NCBI RefSeq assembly: GCF_963853765.1
Contig: NC_088855.1
Coordinates: forward strand, 48,670,001-48,734,000
Length of the DNA stretch: 64,000 bases
Reading direction: 5' to 3'
Source of the DNA: Magallana gigas
Lineage: Eukaryota
Positions 20,194 through 56,552 of this stretch are shown piece by piece. The translations under genes were made by a program, and so were the position numbers. The notes beneath the pieces are model-generated. The model made no database searches, was not told where the DNA came from, and was given only the letters and a program-made list of their open reading frames with translations. The stretch's first letter is position 1. The number at the start of each line of letters is the position of its first letter.

Positions 20194-23100
20194 ATGTCGA
20201 GGAGAAACTGTTTACGCGTCCTGAAAAATCTTCTGGCTATACGCACGCTGTTTTTGGTGCCAATCGCTTTCCTTGCTCCACTGAAAATCTTGGAGGACGG
20301 CGAACCAGTAAGTTAACATTTTTATGGTAAAAAACTAATCACTTCAAAGGAAAAAAAAACCTTGTATGTATTTGTGAAAAGAAGATAATGTCAATTTACC
20401 TATGAACAATTAGGATTTTTTTTTGCAGGAGTGTGCAACATTGTTTTGCACACAGTGTGCTGTAATGACATTTAAAACCATAAGACGATTAATGTTTTTA
20501 AGAGTAAATGGCCACTTGCCGTTTTTATTTTTCTCATAACGAAAAATATGCCTATAGTAAGGCGAGGGAATATCTTTTTTAATTTTGAGAAAAAAAATAT
20601 AAAACTAGGTGCCTGTGAAAATTGCATAGGATTCGCTGTTGACAGCGTCTTAACTGTACTGATATGCTCTATATGATCAATAATCTTTCATGGATTATTG
20701 CTGAAAATATCATCTTACTCTTTCCTTCTCTAATTACTCTTTCCTTTAATTCGTAAGGAAATACAGGTACTCCGACTTTATTCCTATCCACACAACAAAA
20801 CCGCTATAGAAACTTCCTTTTAACTCCAAAACGTGTGTGGGGTAGATATTTGTCTGGGTAATAAATTTCATCTGAAAAAGAAAACAACTTAACAAGATAT
20901 GATGCGTTAAACAGAACACACAAAAATATTAACAGTATGAGTATAAGGAGCCATATTAACATTTTACCTTTTCTTTAGGGTTAGTCAATATTTTTGAAGT
21001 TATCTATAGAAAGAAGAAGAAAAGAAATTCGAATTTTTTTTACAGGTGATAAGGTTTTACCTGTGCAGCAAACTCGTCAAATGCACACAGGGGAGTAAAT
21101 AATATTATTTTGTCACAAAATCTAGGTCGCCTTCGTAAACCTTCTTTGATAACGTCTCGATAAAACCTTGAAATTTACCATCCCAAAGCAAGGTTTATTT
21201 CAAAATATTTACCTGGTAGCTCTGGGGTAACCCTTCTTCATACTAGTACATTGCTCTTTGTCTCAGTAATATCACGAAATCACACTTCAAATTTGGACAA
21301 TTCAACGTTGTTGCGAGTTTGAAATAGCTACATGTATAAGTTTGCAAAACAATATTTCAAAAGTTTGTACTGGTCATAAAACCAATTCATTAGCTTAAAG
21401 AATAATGATACACTCCTAGGAAGAGCATTACCTAGTCTTCACTGTCTCAAATGATTCAAACCCTGACTCTGGTGTACATAAACTTTTCACATTGACGAAA
21501 ACATTATAACGTTGTTTCGCATGATACATCCGGGTTAGTTGGGGTCTAACAAAATCCAGAAAACGACGTACCAAACAAAAGAGGGATATTTGTCAAATGA
21601 ACACATACTTTTTGAATACTATAACGGTTGCTGTTTTATTTAATTTGCAGGAGTCGCGATGCGCCTATGTGCTGGTGGTGATGGCCATTTTATGGCTGAC
21701 GGAGGCCCTTCCTATCCCCGTCACGGCACTAATGCCGGTGTTCCTCATGCCCATGCTTGGGTTGCTGCCGGGACCGACGATCTGCGCCGCTTACGTCAAT
21801 GTGAGTGTCCTCCCTCTCCACGCATTGGTTATTTGTTTTTATCAATTCATTAAAGGATCTAACTTGGAAATCACCGATATATACCTAAGATTACAAGAAG
21901 TCCTCAATTTCGGAATAGATAATTAGCTGTAGGCTATAGTTGCTCAGATTTATTTTTGGCTTTTACTTCTGCATGCATTTGTACTTTTAAGAACGAAACA
22001 CATACGAATGTGTCATTGTATTTTGATTTGATAAAGCGCAGATGTATAATGATGTCAGTATCCTATATAGGGGTCCTATCTCATGCGTATATAAGGATCT
22101 TTATTAATTGATAAAAAGAAATACTCCTACAATCATTGTTCTTTTGATTTTCTTTGGTTTTGGTAAAAATACTTTTTGACCAAGATGCATATAAAAAATA
22201 GGCTACAAGTCCCCATTCCTTTGCCAGAAGCTTACTTACTGGTGAAGCAATACTTTTTTTTTTAATCCAAGATATTCACAAACAAATACAGCTGTGAGAA
22301 TCGATGACAGCCTTAATCCGCGGGCAAAGACAACTAAACACGACCGTTTAAACTAGATTTTTCACAAGGTTACGAACATTTAATTAACCATATGTGTGCA
22401 ATCAACAAACACTGGCGTTTAATCATTGGGTGAGATTTTAGTTCATGTAACGATTTCACAGCTATAAGTCGTAATATGACTTAGCATTCACAGTATTTGA
22501 TTACAAATAGAAATGCGACCATGATCTTCACCCAATAACGTTAGATCGCGCTCATCGCACCGTTTTTATCGTGTGTTGATTGTACTAAACATTGATTGTA
22601 CTAAAATGATCTTGAGTTTCTTAAATCAAAGTTACAAATCAAAAAGTACCAAGGTACTACTTACATTGCTATTTCTGTATATTGTAGGATAATTTGCTAT
22701 TCCTCATACTGTACGACACCTTGCTAATCCTGTGTATAAAGAAATCTTACTATTCCTGTATATTGTAGGATATCTTGCTATTCCTGAATATTGTAGGATA
22801 ATTTGCTTTTTCTGAATATTGTAGGATACCTTGCTATTCCTGTAAATTGAAAGATGCCTTGCTAATCCTGTATATTGTACGATACCCTGCTAATCCTGTA
22901 TATTGTAGGACGCCTTGTTGTTCATGTATATTGTAGGGCGACTTGCTAATCCTGTATATTGTAGGAAGCCTTGCTATTCATGTATATTGTAGGACGTCTT
23001 GCTAATCCTGTGTATTGTAGGAAGCCTTGCTAGTGTTTAATACCTTGTTACTCTTGCTTATTGTAGGGAACCTCCATGTTTATGTGTCTATATTTGTACG

Positions 23101-26100
23101 TTGTTATTTCTGTATATTGTAGGACACCTCCATGTATAATGTTTCTATATTTGTACTTTGCTATTTCTGTATATTGTAGGACACCTCCACGTATAATGTT
23201 TCTATATTTGTACTTTGCTATTTCTGTATATTGTAGGACACCTCCACGTATATTGTTTCTATATTTGTACTTTGCTATTTCTGTATATTGTAGGACACCT
23301 CCACGTATAATGTGTCTATATTTGTACGTTGTTATTCCTGTATATTGTAGGACACCTCCACGTATAATGTTTCTATATTTGTACTTTGCTATTTCTGTAT
23401 ATTGTAGGACACCTCCACGTATAATGTGTCTATATTTGTACGTTGTTATTCCTGTATATTGTAGGACACCTCCACGTATATTGTGTCTATATTTGTACTT
23501 TGCTATTTCTGTATATTGTAGGACACCTCCACGTATATTGTGTCTATATTTGTACTTTGCTATTTCTGTATATTGTAGGACACCTCCACGTATAATGTTT
23601 CTATATTTGTACTTTGCTATTTCTGTATATTGTAGGACACCTCCACGTATAATGTGTCTATATTTGTACGTTGTTATTCCTGTATATTGTAGGACACCTC
23701 CACGTATATTGTGTCTATATTTGTACGTTGTTATTCCTGTATATTGTAGGACACCTCCATGTATAATGTTTCTATATTTGTACTTTGCTATTCCTGTATA
23801 TTGTAGGACACCTCCACGTATATTGTGTCTATATTTGTACGTTGTTATTCCTGTATATTGTAGGACACCTCCACGTATATTGTGTCTATATTTGTACGTT
23901 GTTATTCCTGTATATTGTAGGACACCTCCACGTATATTGTGTCTATATTTGTACGTTGTTATTCCTGTATATTGTAGGACACCTCCACGTATAATGTGTC
24001 TATATTTGTACTTTGCTATTCCTGTATATTGTAGGACACCTCCACGTATATTGTGTCTATATTTGTACGTTGTTATTCCTGTATATTGTAGGACACCTCC
24101 ACGTATATTGTGTCTATATGTGTACGTTGTTATTCCTGTATATTGTAGGACACCTCCATGTATAATGTTTCTATATCTGTACGTTGTTATTCCTGTATAT
24201 TGTAGGACACCTCCATGTATAATGTGTCTATATTTGTACGTTGTTATTCCTGTATATTGTAGGACACCTCCACGTATATTGTGTCTATATTTGTACGTTG
24301 TTATTCCTGTATATTGTAGGACACCTCCACGTATATTGTGTCTATATTTGTACGTTGTTATTCCTGTATATTGTAGGACACCTCCACGTATATTGTGTCT
24401 ATATTTGTACGTTGTTATTCCTGTATATTGTAGGACACCTCCACGTATATTGTGTCTATATTTGTACGTTGTTATTCCTGTATATTGTAGGACACCTCCA
24501 CGTATATTGTGTCTATATTTGTACTTTGCTATTTCTGTATATTGTAGGACACCTCCACGTATAATGTTTCTATATTTGTACTTTGCTATTTCTGTATATT
24601 GTAGGACACCTCCACGTATAATGTGTCTATATTTGTACGTTGTTATTCCTGTATATTGTAGGACACCTCCACGTATATTGTGTCTATATTTGTACGTTGT
24701 TATTCCTGTATATTGTAGGACACCTCCACGTATATTGTGTCTATATTTGTACGTTGTTATTCCTGTATATTGTAGGACACCTCCATGTATAATGTTTCTA
24801 TATTTGTACTTTGCTATTCCTGTATATTGTAGGACACCTCCACGTATATTGTGTCTATATTTGTACGTTGTTATTCCTGTATATTGTAGGACACCTCCAC
24901 GTATATTGTGTCTATATTTGTACGTTGTTATTCCTGTATATTGTAGGACACCTCCACGTATATTGTGTCTATATTTGTACGTTGTTATTCCTGTATATTG
25001 TAGGACACCTCCACGTATAATGTGTCTATATTTGTACTTTGCTATTCCTGTATATTGTAGGACACCTCCACGTATATTGTGTCTATATTTGTACGTTGTT
25101 ATTCCTGTATATTGTAGGACACCTCCACGTATATTGTGTCTATATGTGTACGTTGTTATTCCTGTATATTGTAGGACACCTCCATGTATAATGTGTCTAT
25201 ATCTGTACGTTGTTATTCCTGTATATTGTAGGACACCTCCATGTATAATGTGTCTATATTTGTACGTTGTTATTCCTGTATATTGTAGGACACCTCCACG
25301 TATATTGTGTCTATATTTGTACGTTGTTATTCCTGTATATTGTAGGACACCTCCACGTATATTGTGTCTATATTTGTACGTTGTTATTCCTGTATATTGT
25401 AGGACACCTCCACGTATATTGTGTCTATATTTGTACGTTGTTATTCCTGTATATTGTAGGACACCTCCACGTATATTGTGTCTATATTTGTACGTTGTTA
25501 TTCCTGTATATTGTAGGACACCTCCACGTATATTGTGTCTATATTTGTACGTTGTTATTCCTGTATATTGTAGGACACCTCCACGTATATTGTGTCTATA
25601 TTTGTACGTTGTTATTCCTGTATATTGTAGGACACCTCCATGTATAATGTTTCTATATCTGTACGTTGTTATTCCTGTATATTGTAGGACACCTCCACGT
25701 ATATTGTGTCTATATTTGTACGTTGTTATTCCTGTATATTGTAGGACACCTCCATGTATAATGTTTCTATATCTGTACGTTGTTATTCCTGTATATTGTA
25801 GGACACCTCCACGTATATTGTGTCTATATTTGTACGTTGTTATTCCTGTATATTGTAGGACACCTCCACGTATATTGTGTCTATATTTGTACGTTGTTAT
25901 TCCTGTATATTGTAGGACACCTCCATGTATAATGTTTCTATATCTGTACGTTGTTATTCCTGTATATTGTAGGACACCTCCACGTATATTGTGTCTATAT
26001 TTGTACGTTGTTATTCCTGTATATTGTAGGACACCTCCACGTATATTGTGTCTATATCTGTACGTTGTTATTCCTGTATATTGTAGGACACCTCCACGTA

Positions 26101-29100
26101 TATTGTGTCTATATTTGTACGTTGTTATTCCTGTATATTGTAGGACACCTCCATGTATAATGTTTCTATATCTGTACGTTGTTATTCCTGTATATTGTAG
26201 GACACCTCCACGTATATTGTGTCTATATTTGTACGTTGTTATTCCTGTATATTGTAGGACACCTCCACGTATATTGTGTCTATATTTGTACGTTGTTATT
26301 CCTGTATATTGTAGGACACCTCCATGTATATTGTGTCTATATTTGTACGTTGTTATTCCTGTATATTGTAGGACACCTCCATGTATAATGTGTCTATATT
26401 TGTACTTTGCTATTTCTGTATATTGTAGGACACCTCCACGTATATTGTGTCTATATCTGTACGTTGTTATTCCTGTATATTGTAGGACACCTCCACGTAT
26501 ATTGTGTCTATATTTGTACGTTGTTATTCCTGTATATTGTAGGACACCTCCATGTATAATGTTTCTATATCTGTACGTTGTTATTCCTGTATATTGTAGG
26601 ACACCTCCACGTATATTGTGTCTATATTTGTACGTTGTTATTCCTGTATATTGTAGGACACCTCCACGTATATTGTGTCTATATTTGTACGTTGTTATTC
26701 CTGTATATTGTAGGACACCTCCATGTATATTGTGTCTATATTTGTACGTTGTTATTCCTGTATATTGTAGGACACCTCCATGTATAATGTGTCTATATTT
26801 GTACTTTGCTATTTCTGTATATTGTAGGACACCTCCACGTATATTGTGTCTATATCTGTACGTTGTTATTCCTGTATATTGTAGGACACCTCCACGTATA
26901 TTGTGTCTATATTTGTACGTTGTTATTCCTGTATATTGTAGGACACCTCCATGTATAATGTTTCTATATCTGTACGTTGTTATTCCTGTATATTGTAGGA
27001 CACCTCCATGTATAATGTTTCTATATCTGTACGTTGTTATTCCTGTATATTGTAGGACACCTCCATGCTGTTCCTAGGTGGCCTGATTGTGGCTGTGGCG
27101 GTGGAGGAAGTCAATCTCCACAAACGAATCGCCATCGGAATCCTTTCCCTGGTGGGGTCACAGCCTAACCTGTGAGGAAAATTACACAAAATCATATATC
27201 ATAAAACGGCATATACATAAACTAGCAGAATATAATGATGCATAATAAAAACGCGACAAAATGTCTTTTATACACAGTATGGTTCTATTACCAAGGAAAG
27301 CAATCAACAAAATAGACATCCTTACCCTCCAAATTTATAATAAATGTATTCGTATATTTCTGTTTTATGAAAATAAACCCATTCGTTCCAAAAATGTTCT
27401 TTGTCAGCACTTCTTTTCAAAATGCGGCGTCTGATAATTAGATCTGTTTTCAGTCTGATGCTGGGACTGATGTTACCCACGTGGTTCCTGTCAATGTGGA
27501 TCAGCAACACCGCCGCCACGTCCATGATGGTTCCCATTATTACAGCGGTGGCTTCCCAGATGTCGGAGCTGGAGCCCAACAAGATATCCCGTACGGTTTG
27601 TTGTAGTCTTACATGTAACGCTGAAATGATTGCTCTAGCAGTAATAATCAGAGACAGTCTCTCCTTGAACAGAGAACGGCGGTGTGAGAAACAATGGTTT
27701 TGACGACGTTGAAGACTCCGTTAGTAATGCAGATACCGATGTATCAATGACGAATGGCAATGCTGGCATGGAACAAGAAGATGAACCAAAAGATGAAAAA
27801 GAGAAGTATGAAGAATACACCTGATGAATATACTTTCTTTGTTACAAGTTCTATTTTCTTTGCGTTTTAGATAAGATTTATTGAATCCAATTAGGGCCCC
27901 TGGTGGCAGATAAGTACATGTGCATATTTTATGAAAATCACAATTGTATATACACCAATGTTTACATTTGCAGAAAACAAAGAGAAGAATCTATAAAGAA
28001 GATGAGCAAAGGTTTTGCTTTGTGTGTTGCCTATGCAGCCAATATTGGAGGCGTAGCGACGCTCACTGGCACACCTCCTAATCTCATCTTGCAGGGACAG
28101 GCCAACGAGTAAGTAAAACTAGTAAGTTAAATAACAGATATAATTTTGTTTACCATAACCTAACCCTTGCATTTATCATCACTTTTTGGTTTTTTTTTTT
28201 TACAGATTATACTCCAGATTATCTGAAGCGGACAGTGGGATCACGTTTGCGAAATGGATGGGATTTGGTTTGCCGCTTTCAATCATTGTCCTTTTGTTAT
28301 CCTGGATCTGGCTCCAGATCATGTTTTTAGGATTTTCGTAAGACTTAAAGAGTATTAATAATCACACCTGATTTATATATGAAATAAAATATAAACCAAA
28401 TCTTAGTGTAGTAAACTCCAACACAATTTCCTATTGAACCTTTTCCTTTACTCCCATGCAGGTGTTTCAAAAAGCAGAACCCTAAAGAAAGGAAAGCAAT
28501 TAAACTAGTGATTGAGGGAGAAAAGAAGAAACTTGGAGGAATCACGTTTGTGCATTCATAGCGATCTACCTTAGAACCATTTTAACAAGACCTTGGACTT
28601 TCGATAGGACGTATAAACTGTCTATTTCTTGCGTCAAAACAAGTTGAAAATGACACTTGTTTGAAGCGAAATTTGCACCAATTGCGTAATCTTAGCTCAA
28701 AAGCCAGAATAATCTTTTTTTCAATGAGCCTAGGCCCAGTGGCCAGCAATGATATAGACAAGTCTTCGTCACATTTCTGTGTGACACAACTGCCATAAGT
28801 CCAAGCTCCTGTTAAGATGGTTCTAATTTACTAAAGACTGTATTTTCAAACAATAATCTTTTATCTTAACATATCATCCATGTATTTTTGCAGATTTGGA
28901 GAGATCGTGGTAATGTTAGTTTTTGGAACACTGGCATTATTGTGGATCTTTCGCGACATTCCGGGATTTGGAGGATGGAAGGTCTTATTTAGAGAAAACT
29001 CTAATGAGTGAGTTTTGTGTTACAATTCTACAGATAAGATTTCGATATCCTAAAGGCAGATTTTAAATGTCCCTTCACATTCGTTTAGACCCTTTGTCAA

Positions 29101-30802
29101 AGACTCCACTTCAGCCATGTTGGTAGCAGTGTCTCTGTTCTTTTTACCGGCCAAACTTCCAAGGGTCTTCTGCTGGAACAAATATGACGGTAACCATTTC
29201 ACTATATAATTGCATTGTTCTGGTATTTGACGGTCTAGTTATATGTACATGGAAAATAAGATTAAATGTCAGTCGATGAAGATTTTCAATTGATACCAAA
29301 CAATGTCGCTGCTAGATGTACATGTAACTCATTGATCGTTAAATACAACTACATGTATCTTTCAAGATGTCACACAATGACGCATTGATTTTGATCAATC
29401 ATACGAGAGGAGATTTGGTATTTTTCAATCTTTCCGTTATTTCAGTAATGGTTTATTTTAGAGATCTTTCTTCAAGTTTCAGAAAGCAGTAACAAACCAA
29501 AGTACCACCCGATTCTAACGTGGAAGAACACAGTTCTTAGAATTCCTTGGGGCGTCATTATTCTCCTCGGTGGAGGGTTTGCACTGGCTTCGGCAACATC
29601 CGTTAGTATATTTGTATCTTAAGAGGACTGGATGGCCGTTGCCATTTTGGTGCCATATTAATGTCCTTTAGAAGAAGGACTCTGTATTATGATATACGAA
29701 AAGAGTCCAAATGAAAAGCTAAAATCATTGGTTTTTTCTTCAATAAATAACAGTTTATGGTTGAAAATCTCATTTTTGAAATAATTTTAAGTAGACCTGA
29801 TGAATGATTTGTTTACCACCCAGCCATCTTAAAATTTAAACAGTAAAATTGTCAACTACAAACAGTTGTCACTAAGTTGCCTATGCATCTGGTTTTATTT
29901 AGGCCTCTGGTTTGTCAAAGAAGGTTGGTTGCAGTCTTCGTATTCTGGACAGCTTTGAACCCTGGGTAATGAACTTGATTCTATCTTTGGTCATCGCTGG
30001 CGCCACAGAAATCACCAGTAACAGCGCCACCGCCACCATACTGATGCCCATCATGGCTGAACTGGTAATGATACAGTGCTTGCAGTGATAGGCTGATTTC
30101 CGAGTATAAATGGGATTTTTATTGGGAGACTTGAAAAAGTTTTTTCTTTTCCTCCAGGCTATTAACACTGGATCTCATCCATTATATTTGATGATAACTG
30201 CAGCAGTTGCGTGCTCATTTGCATTCATGCTTCCAGTTGCTACTCCCCCAAATGCTATCGTATTTTCCACTGGGTACATCAAGATTCCAGACATGGTAAA
30301 CACATTACAATATTTATTACGTTTTATATGAAAATACCATCTCCTATATTTTATAGTAATCGTATACACTCAACCTATTCATTTTAATTAATTAATTAAA
30401 GTCTTATTTTTCAAAATGACACGATATTGTTGAAATGTTCAATTTTGACCTTCCGTTAATCTTCAGGCCTTAGCTGGGCTCGTGATGAATGTGTTGGCAG
30501 TACTGGTTCTTAATCTAGGAATAAACACCTGGGGGAGTGCTCTGTTTGATTTGGACACGGTGCCGTTAATCTTTGGAAACTCCACCAGTAGTGCATGCGA
30601 TCCCGTCACAGCCACAATGGCTGCTTTTCAGGCCAACTTCACGACAGCATATGCTCAAAGTACTACCTCGCAAGCCGTCAGTAGCTTCACGACGTCATCC
30701 ACTGTCATTGCTCAGACACTTGTGAACATTACGTCAGAGGCCATTGGTATGACCACAACTACGCAGAGCTTGCCAAGCGGGTTTGTCATGCCGGCGGGAT
30801 AA
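20194..30802 (+). CDS. SLC13-family cotransporter, paralog B; 14 exons, ~656 aa: join(20194..20307,21651..21800,27056..27171,27454..27590,27673..27805,27974..28108,28206..28337,28462..28545,28894..29007,29089..29189,29483..29601,29903..30064,30158..30295,30467..30802)
   Basis: GT-AG introns at the same positions as paralog A, and exons sum to 1971 nt. Motifs: [100 protein letters not shown]. Confidence 0.95.
22666..23030 (+). repeat. Diverged 28-bp tandem array (~13 copies), ttgcta(t/a)tcctgtatattgtag|gaNNcc
   Basis: Unit starts at 22943, 22971 and 22999 (28-bp period). It is the acceptor-containing half of the 57-bp unit. Confidence 0.9.
23076..27067 (+). repeat. 57-bp minisatellite, ~70 copies, built from the SLC13-B exon-3 splice acceptor plus the first ~12 exon nt
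   Basis: Consensus gacacctcca(c/t)gtat(at/aa)tgt(g/t)tctatat(t/c)tgtac(gttgt/tttgc)tatt(c/t)ctgtatattgtag. The last copy runs directly into exon 3 (tgtag|GACACCTCCATGCTG at 27056). Confidence 0.98.
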
Positions 30803-38398: not shown

Positions 38399-40693
38399 CT
38401 AGATTTTCCTCTTCGGGATTTTGAATATTTTTACAGTATTTTTCTCTACTTTGGACAAGGTCATATGCTGTTGGGTGACCAAAACTCGATCCCCGCCCGG
38501 ACTGACGCACAGCTTGTGGGGGTTGGAAATGCCGTCAATTATAATGGCTCCGATTATCTGTCCCTCAGTGGACATTTCCAAAACGTTGTGAGACCGATTC
38601 CCCGCCACAAAGAGACGCGTCCCATGAACAGCGACCCCTCGTGGTCCTTTTAGGTGGTGATACCTGATTTCCCATCGCTTTTCTCCCTTCAGTGTCAGTG
38701 ATAGTACCGACTTCTTGTACCTATCTGTAACAAACAGGTTGCTGCCGTCTTTGTCAACTGTGATGTAATCAGGAAAAAAAAATAAGTCCTGTCCAAACTG
38801 ATCTTGTGTGAATACCTTCAGTTCTCGTCCGTCGCGAGACATGATTTTAACAGATGGCGGTGAAGTATAGCACGAAATGGCAAAAAGATCTTGTGTGCAC
38901 CCGATTCCAAAACATTTCGCCCCAGTTTGAAATCCCCCAACGATTGTGAACTCGGTATCTTTGACTGAAAAGAGTAAAACCTTTTTCTCTTTTGGGAGAG
39001 TGACGGCCACATCGGTTCCACTACAACTGGCGATGTCGTAAGGTCTCACTGAGAGGACTTTCTCAGTTATCCACTTGTACTGATGATCAAAGAGCTTCAG
39101 CTTTCTGTGAACTTGGTCGACAAGGACTATTCGACCATTTCCTATAAACACGGCTCCCGTCAGAGAGCAGTTCTCTCGGTCGTTTGGTGTTTGTCCACGA
39201 AAGGTGCTATCAAGAGTAGCAAGGCGAACACTTGGAGGTCTCGGTTTCCAAGTACTTGGGGTTGATACATGCACACCTTTCTGTAGTGTGGAGATTGAAG
39301 TACTTGATACTGGGGTAGATACATGCCCGATTTTCTTTTGAGTAGAGATAGCTGTACTCGAGATTGGAGGCAATACAGAATTCTTAAAATCTTTTAGCTC
39401 TTCAAAAGGGTTTTCATTTTGCTTCATATCATCCTCCTTCTCAATTGTTGGATGATGGTGGTCTTCTGAATCTTCTCTTACCTCAGTTATTAAAACAGTG
39501 TCGGCTCGTACGGCATAAGAAGGCGGAATAAGAATGCTCTGTCTAGTCACGGCAAAGCTCCCCAGTTCCTTCAACTGGTTTAATAATGATGGAAGGTTTT
39601 TGTCTGGTTTGAAATCGACGTTGACATCTTTTAGGTTGTTTGAAATGTTCCTCAACGATTTTTCGCTTAAGCGAGTCTCTTTCTTTATTTTGGCGATGCA
39701 CGACAACAAGTCGTTTTCCGTGCCATGTTTCATAGCGTTTTTTAAAAGTGCGCTGGAGTTTCGTGTTGTACTAATGATACCTTGGCACGTCTCTTTCTCT
39801 GACTCCAAGATTTCCATTTCTGTTGTTTTCAGTTCTTCCAATTCTTCTAGTATGCGAGTCTCTTGAGCATCCAAAACATCGTTAATTTGCTTTCTGATGT
39901 TAGCTATTTGATTCTTCACATGTTTGGCCGTGTCTTCAAGTGCATCTACGCAGTGTTTGCGGTTATCCATGATTCGGACCGACCAGTCTGTCTGATGCTT
40001 CAAATTTTCAATAAGTGTGTTGGTTTCCTCTTTGCATGCGGTAGCTGCCTCGTGGCATGTTTTTACACTTGAGCAATGTCTGTGGCTAGCTGTTACACAT
40101 GTATCGCACAAAACCACTCCATGGTCGTCACAATAAAAATCAAGAAACCTTCCTTCGTGATCTGGACACAGAGCGTGAATCGAGGTACTCTTGAAGGGTA
40201 GATGTTTGATGTTTTCTATTTCAAAGGAATGATGAGACTGGGTAAACTTCATACTGCTGTGGACTTGATTGCATTCCTCGCACAAGGATTCGTCGCAATC
40301 GTCACACCAATAGCGGGCGAGGGACTTCCGATTCCGGTGAAGACACGTGTCGCATCGCCTGTCTTCTGCGCGTAACTTTGCAGCATTAAGTAATCCATTT
40401 AGAAAATTGTTGGCTGGTAATACATTCGCCCATGATTCGGTTGGGACGTGCCCTGGACCCTCATTAGTGCGTTTACAAACGGGACAAGTAAACGATTTAG
40501 GCGGTCTTTGGTCATTCGTACTCTGAAGAATGTGTTCTGAAATGCAGTCATGACAGAACGAATGGAGGCAAGAGAGTGTGCGCGGGTCGCTGAAATCCTC
40601 AGAACATATCGGGCACACTAGGAACTCCTCAGCAATGTCGCTGAGATCGGCGATACTCCCTGCCAGACTTCTGTGGGTCAAACGAGAAGTCAT
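38399..40693 (-). CDS. TRIM-family E3 ubiquitin ligase (RING, B-box1, B-box2, coiled coil, NHL/beta-propeller; TRIM2/3/56/71-like), 764 aa, single coding exon
   Basis: 764-aa ORF with C3HC4 RING (CPICSEDF...SCLHSFCHDC...CPVC), B-box1 (CDTC...CDDCDESLCEECNQVH), B-box2 (CPDH...YCDDHGVVLCDTCVTASHRHC), a heptad-rich helix and NHL-like repeats (PDYITVDKDGSNLFVTD; GPRGVAVHG; PHKLCVSPGG). A 5'UTR intron is inferred: donor at 40797/40796, TAGCAG acceptor just before the ATG. Confidence 0.95.
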   Translation of the reverse strand: MTSRLTHRSLAGSIADLSDIAEEFLVCPICSEDFSDPRTLSCLHSFCHDCISEHILQSTNDQRPPKSFTCPVCKRTNEGPGHVPTESWANVLPANNFLNGLLNAAKLRAEDRRCDTCLHRNRKSLARYWCDDCDESLCEECNQVHSSMKFTQSHHSFEIENIKHLPFKSTSIHALCPDHEGRFLDFYCDDHGVVLCDTCVTASHRHCSSVKTCHEAATACKEETNTLIENLKHQTDWSVRIMDNRKHCVDALEDTAKHVKNQIANIRKQINDVLDAQETRILEELEELKTTEMEILESEKETCQGIISTTRNSSALLKNAMKHGTENDLLSCIAKIKKETRLSEKSLRNISNNLKDVNVDFKPDKNLPSLLNQLKELGSFAVTRQSILIPPSYAVRADTVLITEVREDSEDHHHPTIEKEDDMKQNENPFEELKDFKNSVLPPISSTAISTQKKIGHVSTPVSSTSISTLQKGVHVSTPSTWKPRPPSVRLATLDSTFRGQTPNDRENCSLTGAVFIGNGRIVLVDQVHRKLKLFDHQYKWITEKVLSVRPYDIASCSGTDVAVTLPKEKKVLLFSVKDTEFTIVGGFQTGAKCFGIGCTQDLFAISCYTSPPSVKIMSRDGRELKVFTQDQFGQDLFFFPDYITVDKDGSNLFVTDRYKKSVLSLTLKGEKRWEIRYHHLKGPRGVAVHGTRLFVAGNRSHNVLEMSTEGQIIGAIIIDGISNPHKLCVSPGGDRVLVTQQHMTLSKVEKNTVKIFKIPKRKI

Positions 40694-51012: not shown

Positions 51013-54000
51013 TTATTCCTCTGTGGTTTTACGGGGAGCAACTTGGATGTGATATTTGGCCAGTTCGTCCTCGGAGATTTCTGTGGGGGCGCCACTCATG
51101 GAATCTCTGCCCTCCACGGTCTTGGGGAAGGCTATGACATCGCGGATACTGTTGGCTCCACAGATCACCGCCAGCATCCTCTCCAGACCTACACATTACA
51201 TTCAGTATCATACATACATGTAGCAACATCCATTCTAATAAGTGGATAATATGATTCACCACATGATCCACATACAATGCCTTCTTTTTTTAATTCTCAT
51301 AGGAAACCAATTAAATGATTGAACAGTACATAAACACATGTATGTGGATCACATTGCAAAATTGCCAGTGTATACAAATACTAGTAATGTAGTTTCACAG
51401 AAATCTGGGAATATAGTTCATATGAGACTATTTAAATGCAATGCACTAAGAAAAATCATCAGTTCATGCAAATATATTCACTGGCATCCTTACTGCAGTT
51501 ATGATATGGACGTGCACTTATTGATTTCCCCATAATTTCACATTATCGAGAATATCAACATTTTATAATTTTTTTTTACCAATATGCCATTTTCAAATTA
51601 ATATCTACAAAAACATGGACACTTACCTAGTGCTATACCTCCATGGGGAGGGCAGCCATAACTCAGAGCATCAATCAGATGTTGTAACTGTCCTGCATCC
51701 TCCTACAACATGTAAAATTATTCCACTATTGGGCAAACAAATTAGAAAGTTATAAACCTTTGAAACTACACTTATTAATTAAATTTTTGGATTTTATCTA
51801 TTAAATACAAAACTCATCATACATTTCGATGTATTTCTGTATCTAAAATGAAATATCATAAAGCTTTTTGTGACAAATATGAAATACATTTACTACTTCA
51901 AAGCAGTCATAGTTAATTTTAATTTCTCAATCTCCATTTTAATAAATTCAATTTTTAAAAAATCCACACAAAGATTTACAATTTGAAACCTCACCTGTAA
52001 GATATTTTCAAAGACATAGCGCTGGGTGTCGGCATCATGTATACGAATGGAGCCGCCGCCAATTTCTGCTCCATTCAGCACCAGGTCATAGTGCTGACTT
52101 CTTATCTAAATAAAATGTAGAATAAAAACGCCCAATGAAGAATTGAAAAAAATGTTCAAAATAATACTAATAACAATATTCAAATAAAAATCAAATATCT
52201 TTTATCTGATTCTGCTCTCAATGATTAAAATTCAGAGAAATGGGGAATTAGACCTAGAAAAAGTACATTGCATATGGTATAAGTGCATGTTTTCAACAAG
52301 CAGAGAGGGAATATTATATAAAATAACCTATTATCAATCAATTATGGAAAGATGCTTGTTGAAGTAAATGAATGTCTGACCTCCAGTGGATCTGTTTTGA
52401 GATATTTTTCATCCTCTGGATGCGGTGCAGTGAATGGATGATGCGCAGATTCTAGTCCCTCTGAAACAAGACAATAAGCTATACTGCAGAATTCATTTCC
52501 ACAACTGATCAGAATATTAAATCTGCATTATATATTGTCTGTGCATAAACTTATTCTTTTCTTAATTATCTATAAAATCAATAAATGGTTTTTAAAATGG
52601 ATCATTTGTGCTTTTGATCAACTTTTAATCACCATTCTTGCATTCAAAATAAAAAATATTTCATGATATTTTTCTATGAACAACAGATATATGAAAATTT
52701 TGTCTTTGAATTTATTGTCATTTTTATTCTCAAAACTGAGTTTATTACATAAAGCCAAGCACATGGGATGCACTTCACTGTGCATATAATCCATGCATGC
52801 ACAGATCATATACATGTACAATGAAGCACAGATCACATACACTGTTTGTACACATACCTCCTGATTCTGCTGGTAAAAACAATGGAAAATCTACTATCCA
52901 CAAAAAGTTAAACTGGTTGTCAGGAATAAATTTCACACCTTGTAAACACAAAATGATACATAAAATGAAAAACTGTGCCTGTATGGTGCATGTATATATA
53001 TTTGGAGAATACATCCTTAATGTGAATAATTCTCAAATGAACATAAAATAAAATGAAAATCTAATTTTCCTAGAATGTATCAGCGAATGCTTGATAAAAT
53101 TGAAGTTTTTTTTTTACAAAATCAATTTTATCAAGAATATGTATAATAAACATATTGCATCTAATAGGCTGTGAAGTTTGATACTTGCACTGATAGGCTG
53201 TGAAGTTTGATACTTGCACTGATAGGCTGTGAAGTTTGATACTTGCATTGATAGGCTGTGAAGTTTGATACTTGCACTGATAGGCTGTGAAGTTTGATAC
53301 TTGCACTGATAGGCTGTGAAGTTTGATACTTGCACTGATAGGCTGTGAAGTTTGATACTTGCACTGATAGGCTGTGAAGTTTGATACTTGCACTGATAGG
53401 CTGTGAAGTTTGATACTAGCATTGATAGGCTGTGAAGTTTGATACTTGCACTGATAGGCTGTGAAGTTTGATACTTGCACTGATAGGCTGTGAAGTTTGA
53501 TACTTGCACTGATAGGCTGTGAAGTTTGATACTAGCACTGATAGGCTGTGAAGTTTGATACTTGCACTGATAGGCTGTGAAGTTTGATACTTGCACTGAT
53601 AGGCTGTGAAGTTTGATACTTGCACTGATAGGCTGTGAAGTTTGATACTTGCACTGATAGGCTGTGAAGTTTGATACTTGCACTGATAGGCTGTGAAGTT
53701 TGATACTTGCACTGATAGGCTGTGAAGTTTGATACTTGCACTGATAGGCTGTGAAGTTTGATACTTGCACTGATAGGCTGTGAAGTTTGATACTTGCACT
53801 GATAGGCTGTGAAGTTTGATACTTGCACTGATAGGCTGTGAAGTTTGATACTTGCACTGATAGGCTGTGAAGTTTGATACTTGCACTGATAGGCTGTGAA
53901 GTTTAATACTTGCACTGATAGGCTGTGAAGTTTGATACTTGCACTGATAGGCTGTGAAGTTTGATACTTGCACTGATAGGCTGTGAAGTTTGATACTTGC

Positions 54001-56552
54001 ACTGATAGGCTGTGAAGTTTGATACTTGCACTGATAGGCTGTGACTTGCACTTGCACTTGCACTTGCACTAATACCTTTTGCCTCTAATAATGATGCTGC
54101 TTTGGTTCGAATCTTTCCACTCACTTCATACTGGATTAAAAAAAATAAAAACTAATCAATATTACAAACAGCACATACTTCATAGAAATTAAAAATCTAA
54201 TCGATCAATCTTACAGGGACGTAACCCTCTCCACAAACAATAATCATCAGATCCCCTTCCTGAACTTTTAACTCTGACGACAGTCTCTGCATGGTGTTGC
54301 TTTTGAATTTGTTAGTGTTGGCTTTGAATTCCCCAGACTTTCCAATTTTTACAAATATGAATTTCTGAAATAAAATTTAATCTGAGTTAAATAATAATGA
54401 TATAATTGTAGAAGGATATAAGACCAATCTAATAACAAGTAAAAAGCTGTCAATGTGACAGCAAACGGGGTTTTTTTTTATGTGAACTGTATCCATAATC
54501 CATGTCAACCCTGAATTGATAAACACTACCTACCGTATCCAGTGAAATGGAGTACCCCATATGCAATATTTTGCCCAAAAATGATTAAGTCCAAAAGCTG
54601 ATTTTTTTCAAAAATTTTCAGAAATCAAAATCCTAGCAATATGCACACCTCTGATATATGTACAATTGATCTGCAAAAGAACAACTTCCTATCTTGAAAA
54701 CTGTAGGAGGAGTTATCCGTACAATGAGGATACCATTTTGGCAGCCGCCCGCCATTTTCACCATTTTAATAACCGGATTTTTCCATTGGAAAACCCGGTT
54801 AAAGATTAGATGTTAGATCCGCTAGAGAATAAGTTTTAATTTTAATTACCTGGTAGATTGAATGATCATATACAGTTCAATATTAGATTATGAATGTATG
54901 TACCTCTTTATTCTTGACAAATCATTTTATTATCGCTTGAAGCTTTCAAAATACAATTACCCCTTGTATAACAAAAGCCTGCAGTTGTAAGTTCCAACCT
55001 GATTTTCATTAACAAAATAAAAATGTATTACCTGGTAATCTTGCTATAAAAATCTGTCTTTCAAAGCCAGATATTAAACTTACAAACTGGAATCATACAT
55101 TTATACATGTACACCACTACAATATATATTTACCTGGTCTATGTGCAAATTCTCTATCTCCTTTCTTGAAAACATCTATAAAAGATACATTAAGGTAATT
55201 TGTATACAGTGTTTGAACCTCTATGATTTATTGTGTAAAATTCTATAAAATACGGTACATATACCACAGTAATTGTCTTTTTATCTTCAAGCTTTTTTTT
55301 TTAAGGTCATGTACAGTATATACAGAAAATAAAATGTGTGAATCACACCTAAAATTATCATCCCTTAATTAGTTTTTTACAAAAGTATATTTGTTTGTCT
55401 ATAACACATATCAATTTGAATTCAACGTAACACCTTCATAATTACAAAAAAAGTAATAGAAAATAAGAGGGTAAAGCCATAATGCATTCCTTTCAATATC
55501 TGATAGTCATTACATGTACTGCTACATGAACATGTACATGTAAGAATTGATATCTTCTCTGTTATAAATGTCTCCTCCCTCCCCCTCTGTACTTACCGAT
55601 CCTTGGGGGACAACCAGGGCCACACAATGGGCCCCCGCCCTCTTCATGTTGTCCTCTATTTTCTGTATTCCACAATCTAACATCAAATCATCCACTGTGT
55701 GAAGCTTAAATAACAAGAATTATATGCACAGATACAGCATGTTTAAAGCATGTTTAATACCTAAAGAACGAATCTACAATCATATAAATAAGCTATTAAA
55801 TAGCTGATTTTACTAATAAAATTTTGATCTTATTCTCATCATGATAAATGGAGTGTCTTGAATTACAATGGTTTTAGTACAGTAAAGGGGCTCAGAGTTA
55901 AAGAAAATCATCTACATCTGTTTTATTTTCATTTGGAATTTAATTTACATTAAAATCATGTCACGATCTGATAAATTGTATGCATTACTGAGTTCATCTG
56001 TAATATTTTTATGTGGACTCGAAAAATGCTCACTGTTAGTCTAAATCAGTCTACCGGGTATATAAACACTAAACAGAGATTAGGAGATTTGGAAAGTATG
56101 CTTAGCTGAATAAGATTCTATATAAATCAATAAAAATTGTAAAAGTTTTAACCCTCCTTATACCTTCATGTTGTATCTAGTGTCTGGTTTGTCGCAGCCA
56201 TATTGTACCATAGCTTCATGATATGTCATGGAGGGGAAGGGTAGAGTTATCTGCTCTTTGAAGCTTGGCCAGCTCTGCAGGATCATGTTTTCTATCAGAT
56301 TCCTGACATCTTCTTGTGTAGTGAATGACAGTTCTATATCAACCTGTAATGTCAACAAAACAAACAATGAAAAAATATCAAATTGAAACTTTCAGGCAAT
56401 TTCTTTCTTTCAAAAAGAATAAGTATGCACATGCATGTACATGTATATTAAAGGGTTTGCATGCATAATGATACAAAGCTCAATCACTCCCCTAAAACAC
56501 TGTGGATGTTTCCCTAGTTAATGAAGGAAAAAACTGGTAAACAATCACATGG

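What the first reader, a model, noticed from the sequence alone, without database searches (positions are those of the whole stretch)
23076..27067. A 4-kb VNTR made of ~70 copies of a splice acceptor, each ending in an in-frame stop
Seen: the 57-bp unit is 45 nt of intron 3' end (...ttcctgtatattgtAG) plus the first ~12 nt of SLC13-B exon 3 (GACACCTCCA(T/C)G, codons D-T-S-M/T). The last copy is the real acceptor (27056). Paralog A exon 3 also starts D-T-S-M, so the unit clearly derives from this junction. Read in the exon frame (phase 0), each unit gives e.g. [18 protein letters not shown], where the stop is the TAG of the next acceptor. Each unit also has a GT after 11 exon nt (CAC|GTATAT or CAT|GTATAA), a potential frameshifting 11-nt microexon. 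Inference: ~70 decoy acceptors compete with the only productive one, and using any of them should give a premature stop and NMD. Array length and unit variants could therefore act as a heritable splicing or expression dial for the transporter, or the intron may be removed stepwise. Known partial parallel: the human ABCA7 intronic VNTR next to a splice site, whose length tracks with exon skipping.
Basis: partly seen in the sequence, partly recalled or inferred. Interest (0 to 1): 0.9.

Follow-up and report, generated by a model that had tools for sequence, protein, structure and literature searches.

The report
Seventy-fold repeated splice acceptor in oyster SLC13
An intron of a Pacific-oyster sodium-carboxylate transporter gene holds 70 tandem copies of its own 3' splice site, but public RNA assemblies show the cell joining exon 2 to the last, real copy, so the array looks like a tolerated, fast-changing minisatellite rather than a shown expression dial.

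Summary
A 57-bp unit is repeated 70.6 times (95% identity) at 23041-27065. There are 71 AG dinucleotides, one per unit; 69 spacings are 57 nt and one is 56. The last AG is the true acceptor of exon 3 (27056) of an intact, expressed SLC13 gene, annotated in Magallana gigas as SLC13 member 5. Sixty-nine of 70 decoys would give an 18-codon tail ending in TAG. The unit is private to this locus.

Assembled RNA from at least 10 public runs joins 21800 directly to 27056. No exon-2-to-decoy or 11-nt-microexon junction turned up. Contigs from three runs start with the last 18-20 intron bases before spliced exons 3-14, which could be intron retention or decoy use. Stepwise removal cannot give the productive mRNA, because no 5' splice site is regenerated.

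The Crassostrea angulata assembly has the same array with only 7 acceptors, so copy number differs tenfold. Saccostrea echinata has a single acceptor.

The closest precedent is the human F7 intron-7 minisatellite, which multiplies a donor site whose copies stay silent. My best reading is a junction-spanning minisatellite whose decoys are largely ignored because only the last acceptor has a real exon behind it. Low-level decoy use hidden by NMD remains untested.

The parts
20194..20307 (+). SLC13-B exon 1 (start codon, 38 codons)
   Evidence: tblastn of the first 38 residues of the full-length transcript protein P0065: 100% identity
21651..21800 (+). SLC13-B exon 2 (150 nt, ends in phase 0; donor GTGAGT at 21801)
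   Evidence: Sequence. Its last 29-30 nt are the overhang of RNA contigs at 27056. Junction seen in 7 more contigs
21801..27055 (+). Intron 2 (5255 nt, about 4.4 kb of it tandem arrays)
22662..23032 (+). Older 28-bp array (13.4 copies, 78% matches). Each unit ends ...TATATTGTAG and the next starts GAYRCCT, so it also carries the acceptor plus about 7 exon-like nt; several AGs are mutated
   Evidence: The same array is in C. angulata
23041..27065 (+). 57-bp array, 70.6 copies: 45 nt of intron 3' end plus the first 12 nt of exon 3. It gives 70 decoy acceptors (exon-like starts at 23067...26999) and the true one
27054..27055 (+). AG of the acceptor actually used
   Evidence: RNA contigs in 10 runs
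27056..27171 (+). SLC13-B exon 3 (116 nt, DTSMLFLGG...; donor GTGAGG)
   Evidence: Match to NaCT residues 85-121, E = 1e-9. Joint 27171>27454 in 3 runs
27454..30802 (+). SLC13-B exons 4-14 (27454-27590, 27673-27805, 27974-28108, 28206-28337, 28462-28545, 28894-29007, 29089-29188, 29476-29601, 29903-30063, 30157-30294, 30466-30802 including the stop)
   Evidence: Joints in RNA contigs. Exons 2-14 give an open 1863-nt reading frame that is 99% identical to P0065
8542..8657 (+). Exon 3 of the upstream paralog A, with a single acceptor and the same D-T-S-M start

Best explanation
This is a locus-private minisatellite that spans a splice junction. A 57-bp segment covering the last 45 nt of intron 2 and the first 12 nt of exon 3 of an oyster SLC13 (NaCT/NaDC-like) transporter gene was duplicated in tandem, then amplified by unequal exchange or slippage to about 70 copies in this genome. 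An older 28-bp array of the same junction lies upstream, so this is a second round. Each unit holds only one AG, so the AG-free zone before the true acceptor is 55 nt. Its branch site and pyrimidine tract must therefore lie inside the last unit, and all 70 decoys carry the same intronic signals. The spliceosome still uses the last copy. The inferred reason is that only this copy has real exon sequence behind it and a good donor 116 nt downstream (exon definition). The decoys are followed only by a weak GTATAT/GTATAA 11 nt away, or by the real donor 173 nt to 4.1 kb away. On this reading the array is a tolerated, rapidly changing intron expansion. Its cost is at most slower or leakier removal of intron 2.
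For: Shown: array anatomy and uniqueness in the genome. Higher-order blocks of unit variants, typical of unequal exchange (self-identity peaks at lags 7 and 18). The gene is intact, with exons 2-14 open over 1863 nt, and annotated as M. gigas SLC13 member 5. The productive junction 21800|27056 is in contigs of 3 RNA runs from 3 studies and 7 further runs. No decoy-junction or microexon ORF appeared among short ORFs matching the N-terminus. Ancestral state: Saccostrea echinata has one acceptor and no array. C. angulata has the same 28-bp array but only 7 copies of the 57-mer acceptor, and its exon 3 is unchanged at the protein level. Precedent: in human F7 intron 7 a 37-bp VNTR spans the exon-intron boundary, and its identical pseudo donor sites are functional but silent (PMC1557585). 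Inferred, not shown: exon definition as the reason the last copy wins (established knowledge: Berget's exon-definition model; Reed and Maniatis 1986 on duplicated splice sites and adjacent exon sequence; AG scanning from the branch point, Smith et al.).
Against: RNA contigs from three runs (L035, L036, L037) run from spliced exons 3-14 back into the last 18-20 nt of the array instead of exon 2. Some transcripts therefore keep array sequence in front of exon 3, which fits decoy use as well as intron retention. Assembled contigs drop rare isoforms, and NMD would remove decoy products, so steady-state assemblies are blind to moderate decoy use. The one raw-read run had no depth on exon 3. This gene's real donors include weak ones (CAC|GTTTGT, GAA|GTATGA), so the unit's GTATAT is not clearly unusable. 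All 7 variable unit positions lie outside the 23-nt acceptor core. This is roughly 2% by chance, but the test was post hoc and homogenisation could also cause it.
Confidence: 0.68

Rival explanations
1. One reading: decoy acceptors are used at a meaningful rate, the products carry a premature TAG and are removed by NMD, and heritable copy number therefore sets transporter output.
For: All decoys share the full intronic signal set with the true site (one AG per unit). 69 of 70 give an in-frame TAG. Copy number differs tenfold between sister taxa. Contigs from three RNA runs keep array sequence before exon 3. NCBI's C. angulata annotation contains a 121-aa model that splices exon 2 to a decoy in the older 28-bp array, though its evidence base is unknown.
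Against: No exon-2-to-decoy junction was seen in any assembled RNA. 10 runs give the productive junction, 7 of them as unbranched contigs. Full-length transcripts are abundant in public assemblies. The mirror-image F7 case shows that identical pseudo-sites can stay fully silent (PMC1557585).
Confidence: 0.2
2. Assembly artefact: the array is real but its length here is inflated, or the C. angulata length is collapsed, so the tenfold difference is technical.
For: Copy number here rests on a single assembly. I could not lay DNA reads on the full array because the tool refuses long repeats. Array depth in RNA runs does not give a copy number.
Against: Spacing is 57 nt for 69 of 70 intervals, with 16 unit variants ordered in blocks, which is not what a mis-assembled collapse or expansion usually gives. 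The same unit sits at the same place, with collinear flanks, in an independent assembly.
Confidence: 0.07
3. The array has another role unrelated to acceptor choice, such as an intronic regulatory or protein-binding platform on the T-rich RNA or DNA.
For: The array is 44% T on the sense strand. An unrelated 64-bp x 10 array sits at the same place in the C. virginica ortholog, and short repeats lie before exon 3 of paralog A, so arrays recur next to this acceptor.
Against: There is no sequence conservation between the arrays. Saccostrea has none. Oyster genomes are generally rich in tandem repeats (PMC7492417), so recurrence may be chance.
Confidence: 0.05

Closest known systems
Human F7 intron 7 (IVS7) 37-bp VNTR spanning the exon 7 / intron 7 boundary (Borensztajn et al. 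2006, PMC1557585)
   Same: A minisatellite whose terminal unit spans a splice junction, so the authentic site sits beside several sequence-identical pseudo-sites. The pseudo-sites are competent but normally silent, and the exon-adjacent copy is the one used.
   Different: F7 multiplies the donor (5' site), and only several copies are described. Here the acceptor (branch site, pyrimidine tract and AG) is multiplied about 70 times, in a mollusc. The 5'-to-3' scanning proposed for F7 would favour the wrong, upstream copies here, so another rule must apply, probably exon definition.
Human ABCA7 intronic VNTR (De Roeck et al. 2018, PMC5954066)
   Same: An intronic VNTR close to a splice site, proposed to affect splicing through its length.
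   Different: I found that paper only as a search hit and read its title and abstract start. A length-to-splicing association is reported there. No such association has been tested here.
Recursive splice sites / ratchet points
   Same: Internal acceptors inside a long intron.
   Different: Recursive sites need AG|GT so that a donor is regenerated. Here the join reads AAT|GAC, and the only GT lies 11 nt later, so each use would add 11 nt and shift the frame.
Helentron-borne satellite-like arrays of the Pacific oyster (PMC7492417)
   Same: Short tandem arrays scattered in oyster euchromatin, including in genes.
   Different: Those are dispersed families carried by mobile elements. This unit occurs at one locus only and derives from the host gene's own junction.

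Membership tests
Junction-spanning minisatellite that multiplies a splice site (F7 IVS7 type) | Head-to-tail array of a 10-100 bp unit | tested here: met
   Period 57, 70.6 copies, 95% matches
Junction-spanning minisatellite that multiplies a splice site (F7 IVS7 type) | The terminal unit spans the exon-intron boundary, so pseudo-sites are identical to the authentic site | tested here: met
   The 23-nt core across the AG is identical in 70 copies including the true one. The unit carries 12 exon nt
Junction-spanning minisatellite that multiplies a splice site (F7 IVS7 type) | Pseudo-sites silent in normal transcripts; the exon-adjacent site is used | tested here: inconclusive
   10 runs show the true junction and none shows a decoy junction. 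These are assembled contigs at steady state, and contigs from three runs keep array sequence before exon 3
Junction-spanning minisatellite that multiplies a splice site (F7 IVS7 type) | Copy-number variation between individuals or taxa | tested here: met
   71 acceptors here against 7 in the C. angulata assembly. Variation within the species was not tested
SLC13 / DASS sodium-coupled carboxylate-sulfate transporters (host gene) | Na_sulph_symp (PF00939) fold along the whole protein and an intact reading frame | tested here: met
   PF00939 exon hits. Exon 3 aligns to NaCT/NaDC3 structures. 620 open codons for exons 2-14, including both SNT-type motifs. 99% identical to P0065, in whose 90% cluster the annotated M. 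gigas SLC13A5-like protein lies
Recursive splice site | AG immediately followed by GT, so that a donor is regenerated after the first step | tested here: not met
   The unit reads TAG|GACACC. The first GT is at +12
Dispersed Helentron-associated satellite-like repeat | Copies at many loci in the genome | tested here: not met
   One candidate locus genome-wide. 70 of 70 pattern hits lie in this array
VNTR acting as a splicing or expression QTL (ABCA7 type) | Array length correlates with isoform ratio or expression | not testable with these tools
   This needs genotyped individuals with matched RNA

The most novel reading that the evidence does not exclude
The array is a heritable rheostat. Each extra copy of the complete acceptor diverts a fraction of exon-2 donors into a dead-end, NMD-targeted product. 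The 7-copy and 71-copy alleles would then differ materially in SLC13 transporter output, and selection acts on copy number.
Probability: 0.15. Interest if true: 0.8.

Novelty: new variant of a known kind. Interest (0 to 1): 0.5.

Why it matters
This is a natural cis-competition experiment on a scale nobody would build. Seventy acceptors have identical branch site, pyrimidine tract and AG, and differ only in what lies downstream of exon position +12. The gene still makes correct mRNA, which argues that downstream exon context decides 3' splice-site choice in this animal, not the intronic signals or the order of transcription. It is the acceptor-side counterpart of the F7 donor minisatellite that was used to study 5' site choice. 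With alleles or taxa of 7 and 71 copies and tagging exonic SNPs, the cost of decoy sites, NMD coupling and intron-removal kinetics can be tested directly in oysters. For genome annotation it is a warning: the C. angulata gene model was truncated at a decoy.

Tried and rejected
As the tool advised, I laid the last 10 units plus the rest of the gene instead. Joints from exon 2 therefore appear only as loose ends, and 33 weaker loose ends were not listed.
2. The raw-read run X24 had no depth on exon 3, so it gives no quantitative junction counts.
3. Depth over the array in RNA runs (up to 83 against exon depths of about 110-430 in X19) is not evidence of decoy use. Seventy collapsed copies lift pre-mRNA-level coverage over the assembler's threshold.
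4. A scan of JGI metagenome contigs with a pattern matching both the true and the decoy exon-2 junctions found nothing at all, so it is uninformative.
5. The search for short ORFs with an exon-2-plus-decoy tail was negative. Short fragments can be hidden as members of the 101-member cluster, of which only 15 were listed.
6. The idea that the 28-bp unit derives from the first 20 nt of exon 3 (GACACCT..TGCTNTTCCT; reading D-T-L-L-F-L against D-T-S-M-L-F-L) is only suggestive. Two individual units scored at p of about 0.005-0.01, but the consensus did not (p of about 0.19). The Saccostrea intron end offers an alternative source.
7. The idea that the C. virginica 64-bp array also copies its acceptor, or is homologous to the 57-mer, is rejected. 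Alignments score no better than shuffles.
8. The 1333-codon ORF through the array is rejected as a gene. It is open only because 57 = 19 x 3, it lies in an intron that is spliced out, and it is not in the exon frame.
9. The look-up of encoding contigs found no record for the M. gigas reference protein, so no second M. gigas assembly could be compared.
10. The search of earlier findings returned nothing.
Full report
WHAT IS THERE

The window is G000:C3:48670001-48734000 of a 564-Mb, 29-contig genome. Public runs that hold this stretch are labelled as one oyster species or as "oyster metagenome". The gene's protein is 99% identical to P0065, whose 90% cluster holds the M. gigas protein annotated as SLC13 member 5 isoform X1 (XP_011425736). 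The window holds no N.

TRF reports a 57-bp array at 23041-27065 with 70.6 copies, 95% matches and no indels. Directly upstream, at 22662-23032, lies an older 28-bp array with 13.4 copies and 78% matches. The motif TGTAG|G recurs 71 times; 69 spacings are 57 nt and one is 56. The region contains exactly 71 AG dinucleotides, one per unit.

There are 16 unit variants, differing at only 7 positions. They are arranged in higher-order blocks, for example a block of about 15-18 units that occurs twice and a 7-unit block that occurs twice. This is the pattern expected from unequal exchange.

A whole-genome DNA search finds one locus only. The 23-nt core across the acceptor, CTGTATATTGTAG|GACACCTCCA, has 70 exact hits. 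All lie in this array, and none lies elsewhere even with 3 mismatches. The array is therefore not one of the dispersed, Helentron-borne satellite-like repeats described for this oyster (PMC7492417).

THE GENE

Two SLC13 paralogs lie head to tail in the window, and a third ends just upstream. For paralog B, RNA contigs define these exons:
- exon 3 at 27056-27171;
- exons 4-14 up to the stop at 30800-30802;
- exon 2 at 21651-21800, ending in phase 0 with donor GTGAGT;
- exon 1 at 20194-20307.

Exons 2-14 give an open 1863-nt frame with both SNT-type motifs. Exon 3 aligns to residues 85-121 of human NaCT. Paralog A exon 3 (8542-8657) and the orthologs in C. virginica and Saccostrea echinata all begin D-T-S-M. 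The exon part of the repeat unit is therefore the copy, not the source.

These hold. Read in the exon frame, 69 of 70 decoys give 18 codons and then the TAG of the next acceptor. The exception is the first, degenerate 56-nt unit. Every decoy has a GT 11 nt downstream, and including such an 11-nt piece would shift the frame into an early stop.

One further point follows from the one-AG-per-unit rule. The AG-free zone before the true acceptor is 55 nt long. Its branch site and pyrimidine tract must therefore lie inside the last unit, so all decoys carry the same intronic signals. This is inference from the sequence plus the established AG-scanning rule.

WHAT THE RNA SAYS

I laid the last ten units plus the rest of the gene, as the tool advised.

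In three RNA runs from three studies, contigs stop matching at 27056. Their overhang there is the last 29-30 nt of exon 2. One 2245-nt contig carries 209 nt upstream of exon 3. All downstream introns are joined at GT..AG, apart from a few joints whose reported ends differ and which are described under "Things noticed in passing".

Seven more runs each give an unbranched 2.2-2.6-kb contig reading ...CTTACGTCAAT|GACACCTCCATGCTG. The 90% cluster of the full-length protein has 101 members, mostly such RNA contigs. The productive junction is therefore the dominant form in at least 10 runs.

A search for short ORFs sharing the N-terminus found no product with a decoy tail or a microexon tail. Fragments may be hidden inside the large cluster, so this negative is not conclusive.

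Two 568-residue cluster members start at the M of DTSM. Their contigs, from three runs, begin with the last 18-20 nt of the array, followed by spliced exons 3-14. The 18-nt start is exactly where a 31-mer first becomes unique. Some transcripts therefore keep array sequence in front of exon 3. Late removal or retention of this 5.3-kb intron explains that, and so does decoy use. The data cannot separate the two.

The raw-read run had no depth on exon 3. Depth over the array in the RNA assemblies is uninterpretable, because 70 copies collapse onto a few contigs.

STEPWISE REMOVAL

After splicing to a decoy, the join reads AAT|GAC, so no donor is regenerated. The only nearby GT lies 11 nt further on. 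Any decoy use therefore leaves at least 11 extra nt in the mRNA. Stepwise removal cannot produce the mRNA that is observed.

COMPARATIVE EVIDENCE

NCBI's C. angulata annotation holds a 121-residue "Na(+)/dicarboxylate cotransporter 3-like" protein. It consists of exons 1-2 joined to a decoy acceptor in the older 28-bp array, with tail [11 protein letters not shown]..., at L038 position 12386. A 936-residue model spans the neighbouring paralog and the rest of this gene. The junction arrays evidently confused the annotation. Whether RNA supported that junction is unknown. In the window genome the corresponding AG is mutated to AC.

The C. angulata locus is collinear with the window. It has the same 28-bp array but only 7 acceptors of the 57-bp type (6.5 copies), and its exon 3 encodes the same 38 residues. 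That is a tenfold difference in copy number between sister taxa, provided neither assembly is wrong.

The C. virginica ortholog has an unrelated 64-bp x 10.1 array ending 17 nt before exon 3. It shows no significant similarity to its own junction or to the 57-mer. Saccostrea echinata has a single acceptor...ctattgtttctgtag|GACACGTC, and no array.

The history is therefore: a single acceptor, then a 28-bp junction array in the gigas/angulata lineage, then a 57-bp junction array that expanded strongly in this genome.

MECHANISM

Best reading (about 0.68): a junction-spanning minisatellite whose decoys are largely ignored. Only the last acceptor is followed by real exon sequence and a good donor 116 nt away. 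The nearest decoys would define exons of 173, 230 and 287 nt or more, each carrying a stop. The other decoys have only a weak GTATAT/GTATAA 11 nt away. That exon definition is the deciding factor is inference from established splicing biology. It was not tested here.

COMPARISON WITH WHAT IS KNOWN

The closest precedent is the human F7 intron-7 37-bp VNTR. Its first unit spans the exon-intron boundary, and its identical pseudo donor sites are functional but silent (PMC1557585). The present case is the acceptor-side mirror image, at about 70 copies and in a mollusc. A literature search for an acceptor-side example found none, which is weak evidence of absence.

It does not meet the definition of a recursive splice site or of a dispersed oyster satellite-like repeat. 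The ABCA7-type link between array length and splicing is untested.

VERDICT

This is a new variant of a known kind. It is moderately interesting as a natural 70-fold test of 3' splice-site choice, and as a tractable system if array length turns out to matter.

THINGS NOTICED IN PASSING

Several things unrelated to the array came up.

- A TRIM-like RING/B-box ORF lies at 38399-40693 on the minus strand.
- A second array, 29 bp x 30.7 copies, lies at 53155-54044.
- A repeat at about 28552-28699 in intron 8 reaches very high depth in all four runs laid and has no Rfam match.
- Some RNA contigs carry minor variant joints in exons 5-7. One is 27802>27974, with the letters AAA between its two sides, beside the main 27805>27974. 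Another, in a single run, is 28103>28216 with 18 other letters between.

Noticed in passing
window 38399-40693 (-): An uninterrupted 764-codon ORF with RING (zf-RING_UBOX, C3HC4) and B-box zinc-finger domains. It looks like a single-exon TRIM-like E3 ligase gene.
   Followed up: partly
window 53155-54044: A second young minisatellite: 29-bp unit, 30.7 copies, 98% matches. Its gene context was not examined.
   Followed up: no
window 28552-28699 (intron 8 of SLC13-B): A short stretch with contig depth in the thousands in three RNA runs and many raw reads with loose ends on both sides. It is probably a dispersed, transcribed repeat. No Rfam match at E <= 0.01.
   Followed up: partly
window 8221-8473 (intron 2 of paralog A): Degenerate tandem repeats (periods 36-97, about 2 copies each) lie 70-320 nt upstream of paralog A exon 3. 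They are unrelated in sequence to the 57-mer.
   Followed up: no
L039 4372-5018 (C. virginica ortholog, intron 2): An unrelated 64-bp x 10.1 array (92% matches) ends 17 nt before exon 3. Tandem arrays recur next to this acceptor in different oysters.
   Followed up: partly
L038 10001-12490 and 1-16674 (C. angulata): The annotation has a 121-residue model ending at a decoy acceptor of the 28-bp array, and a 936-residue model that seems to fuse the upstream paralog with the rest of this gene. These are likely annotation errors caused by the junction arrays.
   Followed up: partly
window 27802/27805>27974 and 28103>28216: Some RNA contigs show variant joints. In two runs a contig joins 27802 to 27974 with AAA between the two sides, beside the main 27805>27974. 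In one run 28103>28216 has 18 other letters between. These could be alternative splicing or allelic differences.
   Followed up: no
G000:C3:48668508-48668657, just upstream of the window: A further SLC13 C-terminal exon hit lies 1.3 kb before the window start, so the tandem SLC13 cluster has at least three members. More SLC13 loci lie at C3 33.07, 44.8 and 45.2 Mb and on C5.
   Followed up: no
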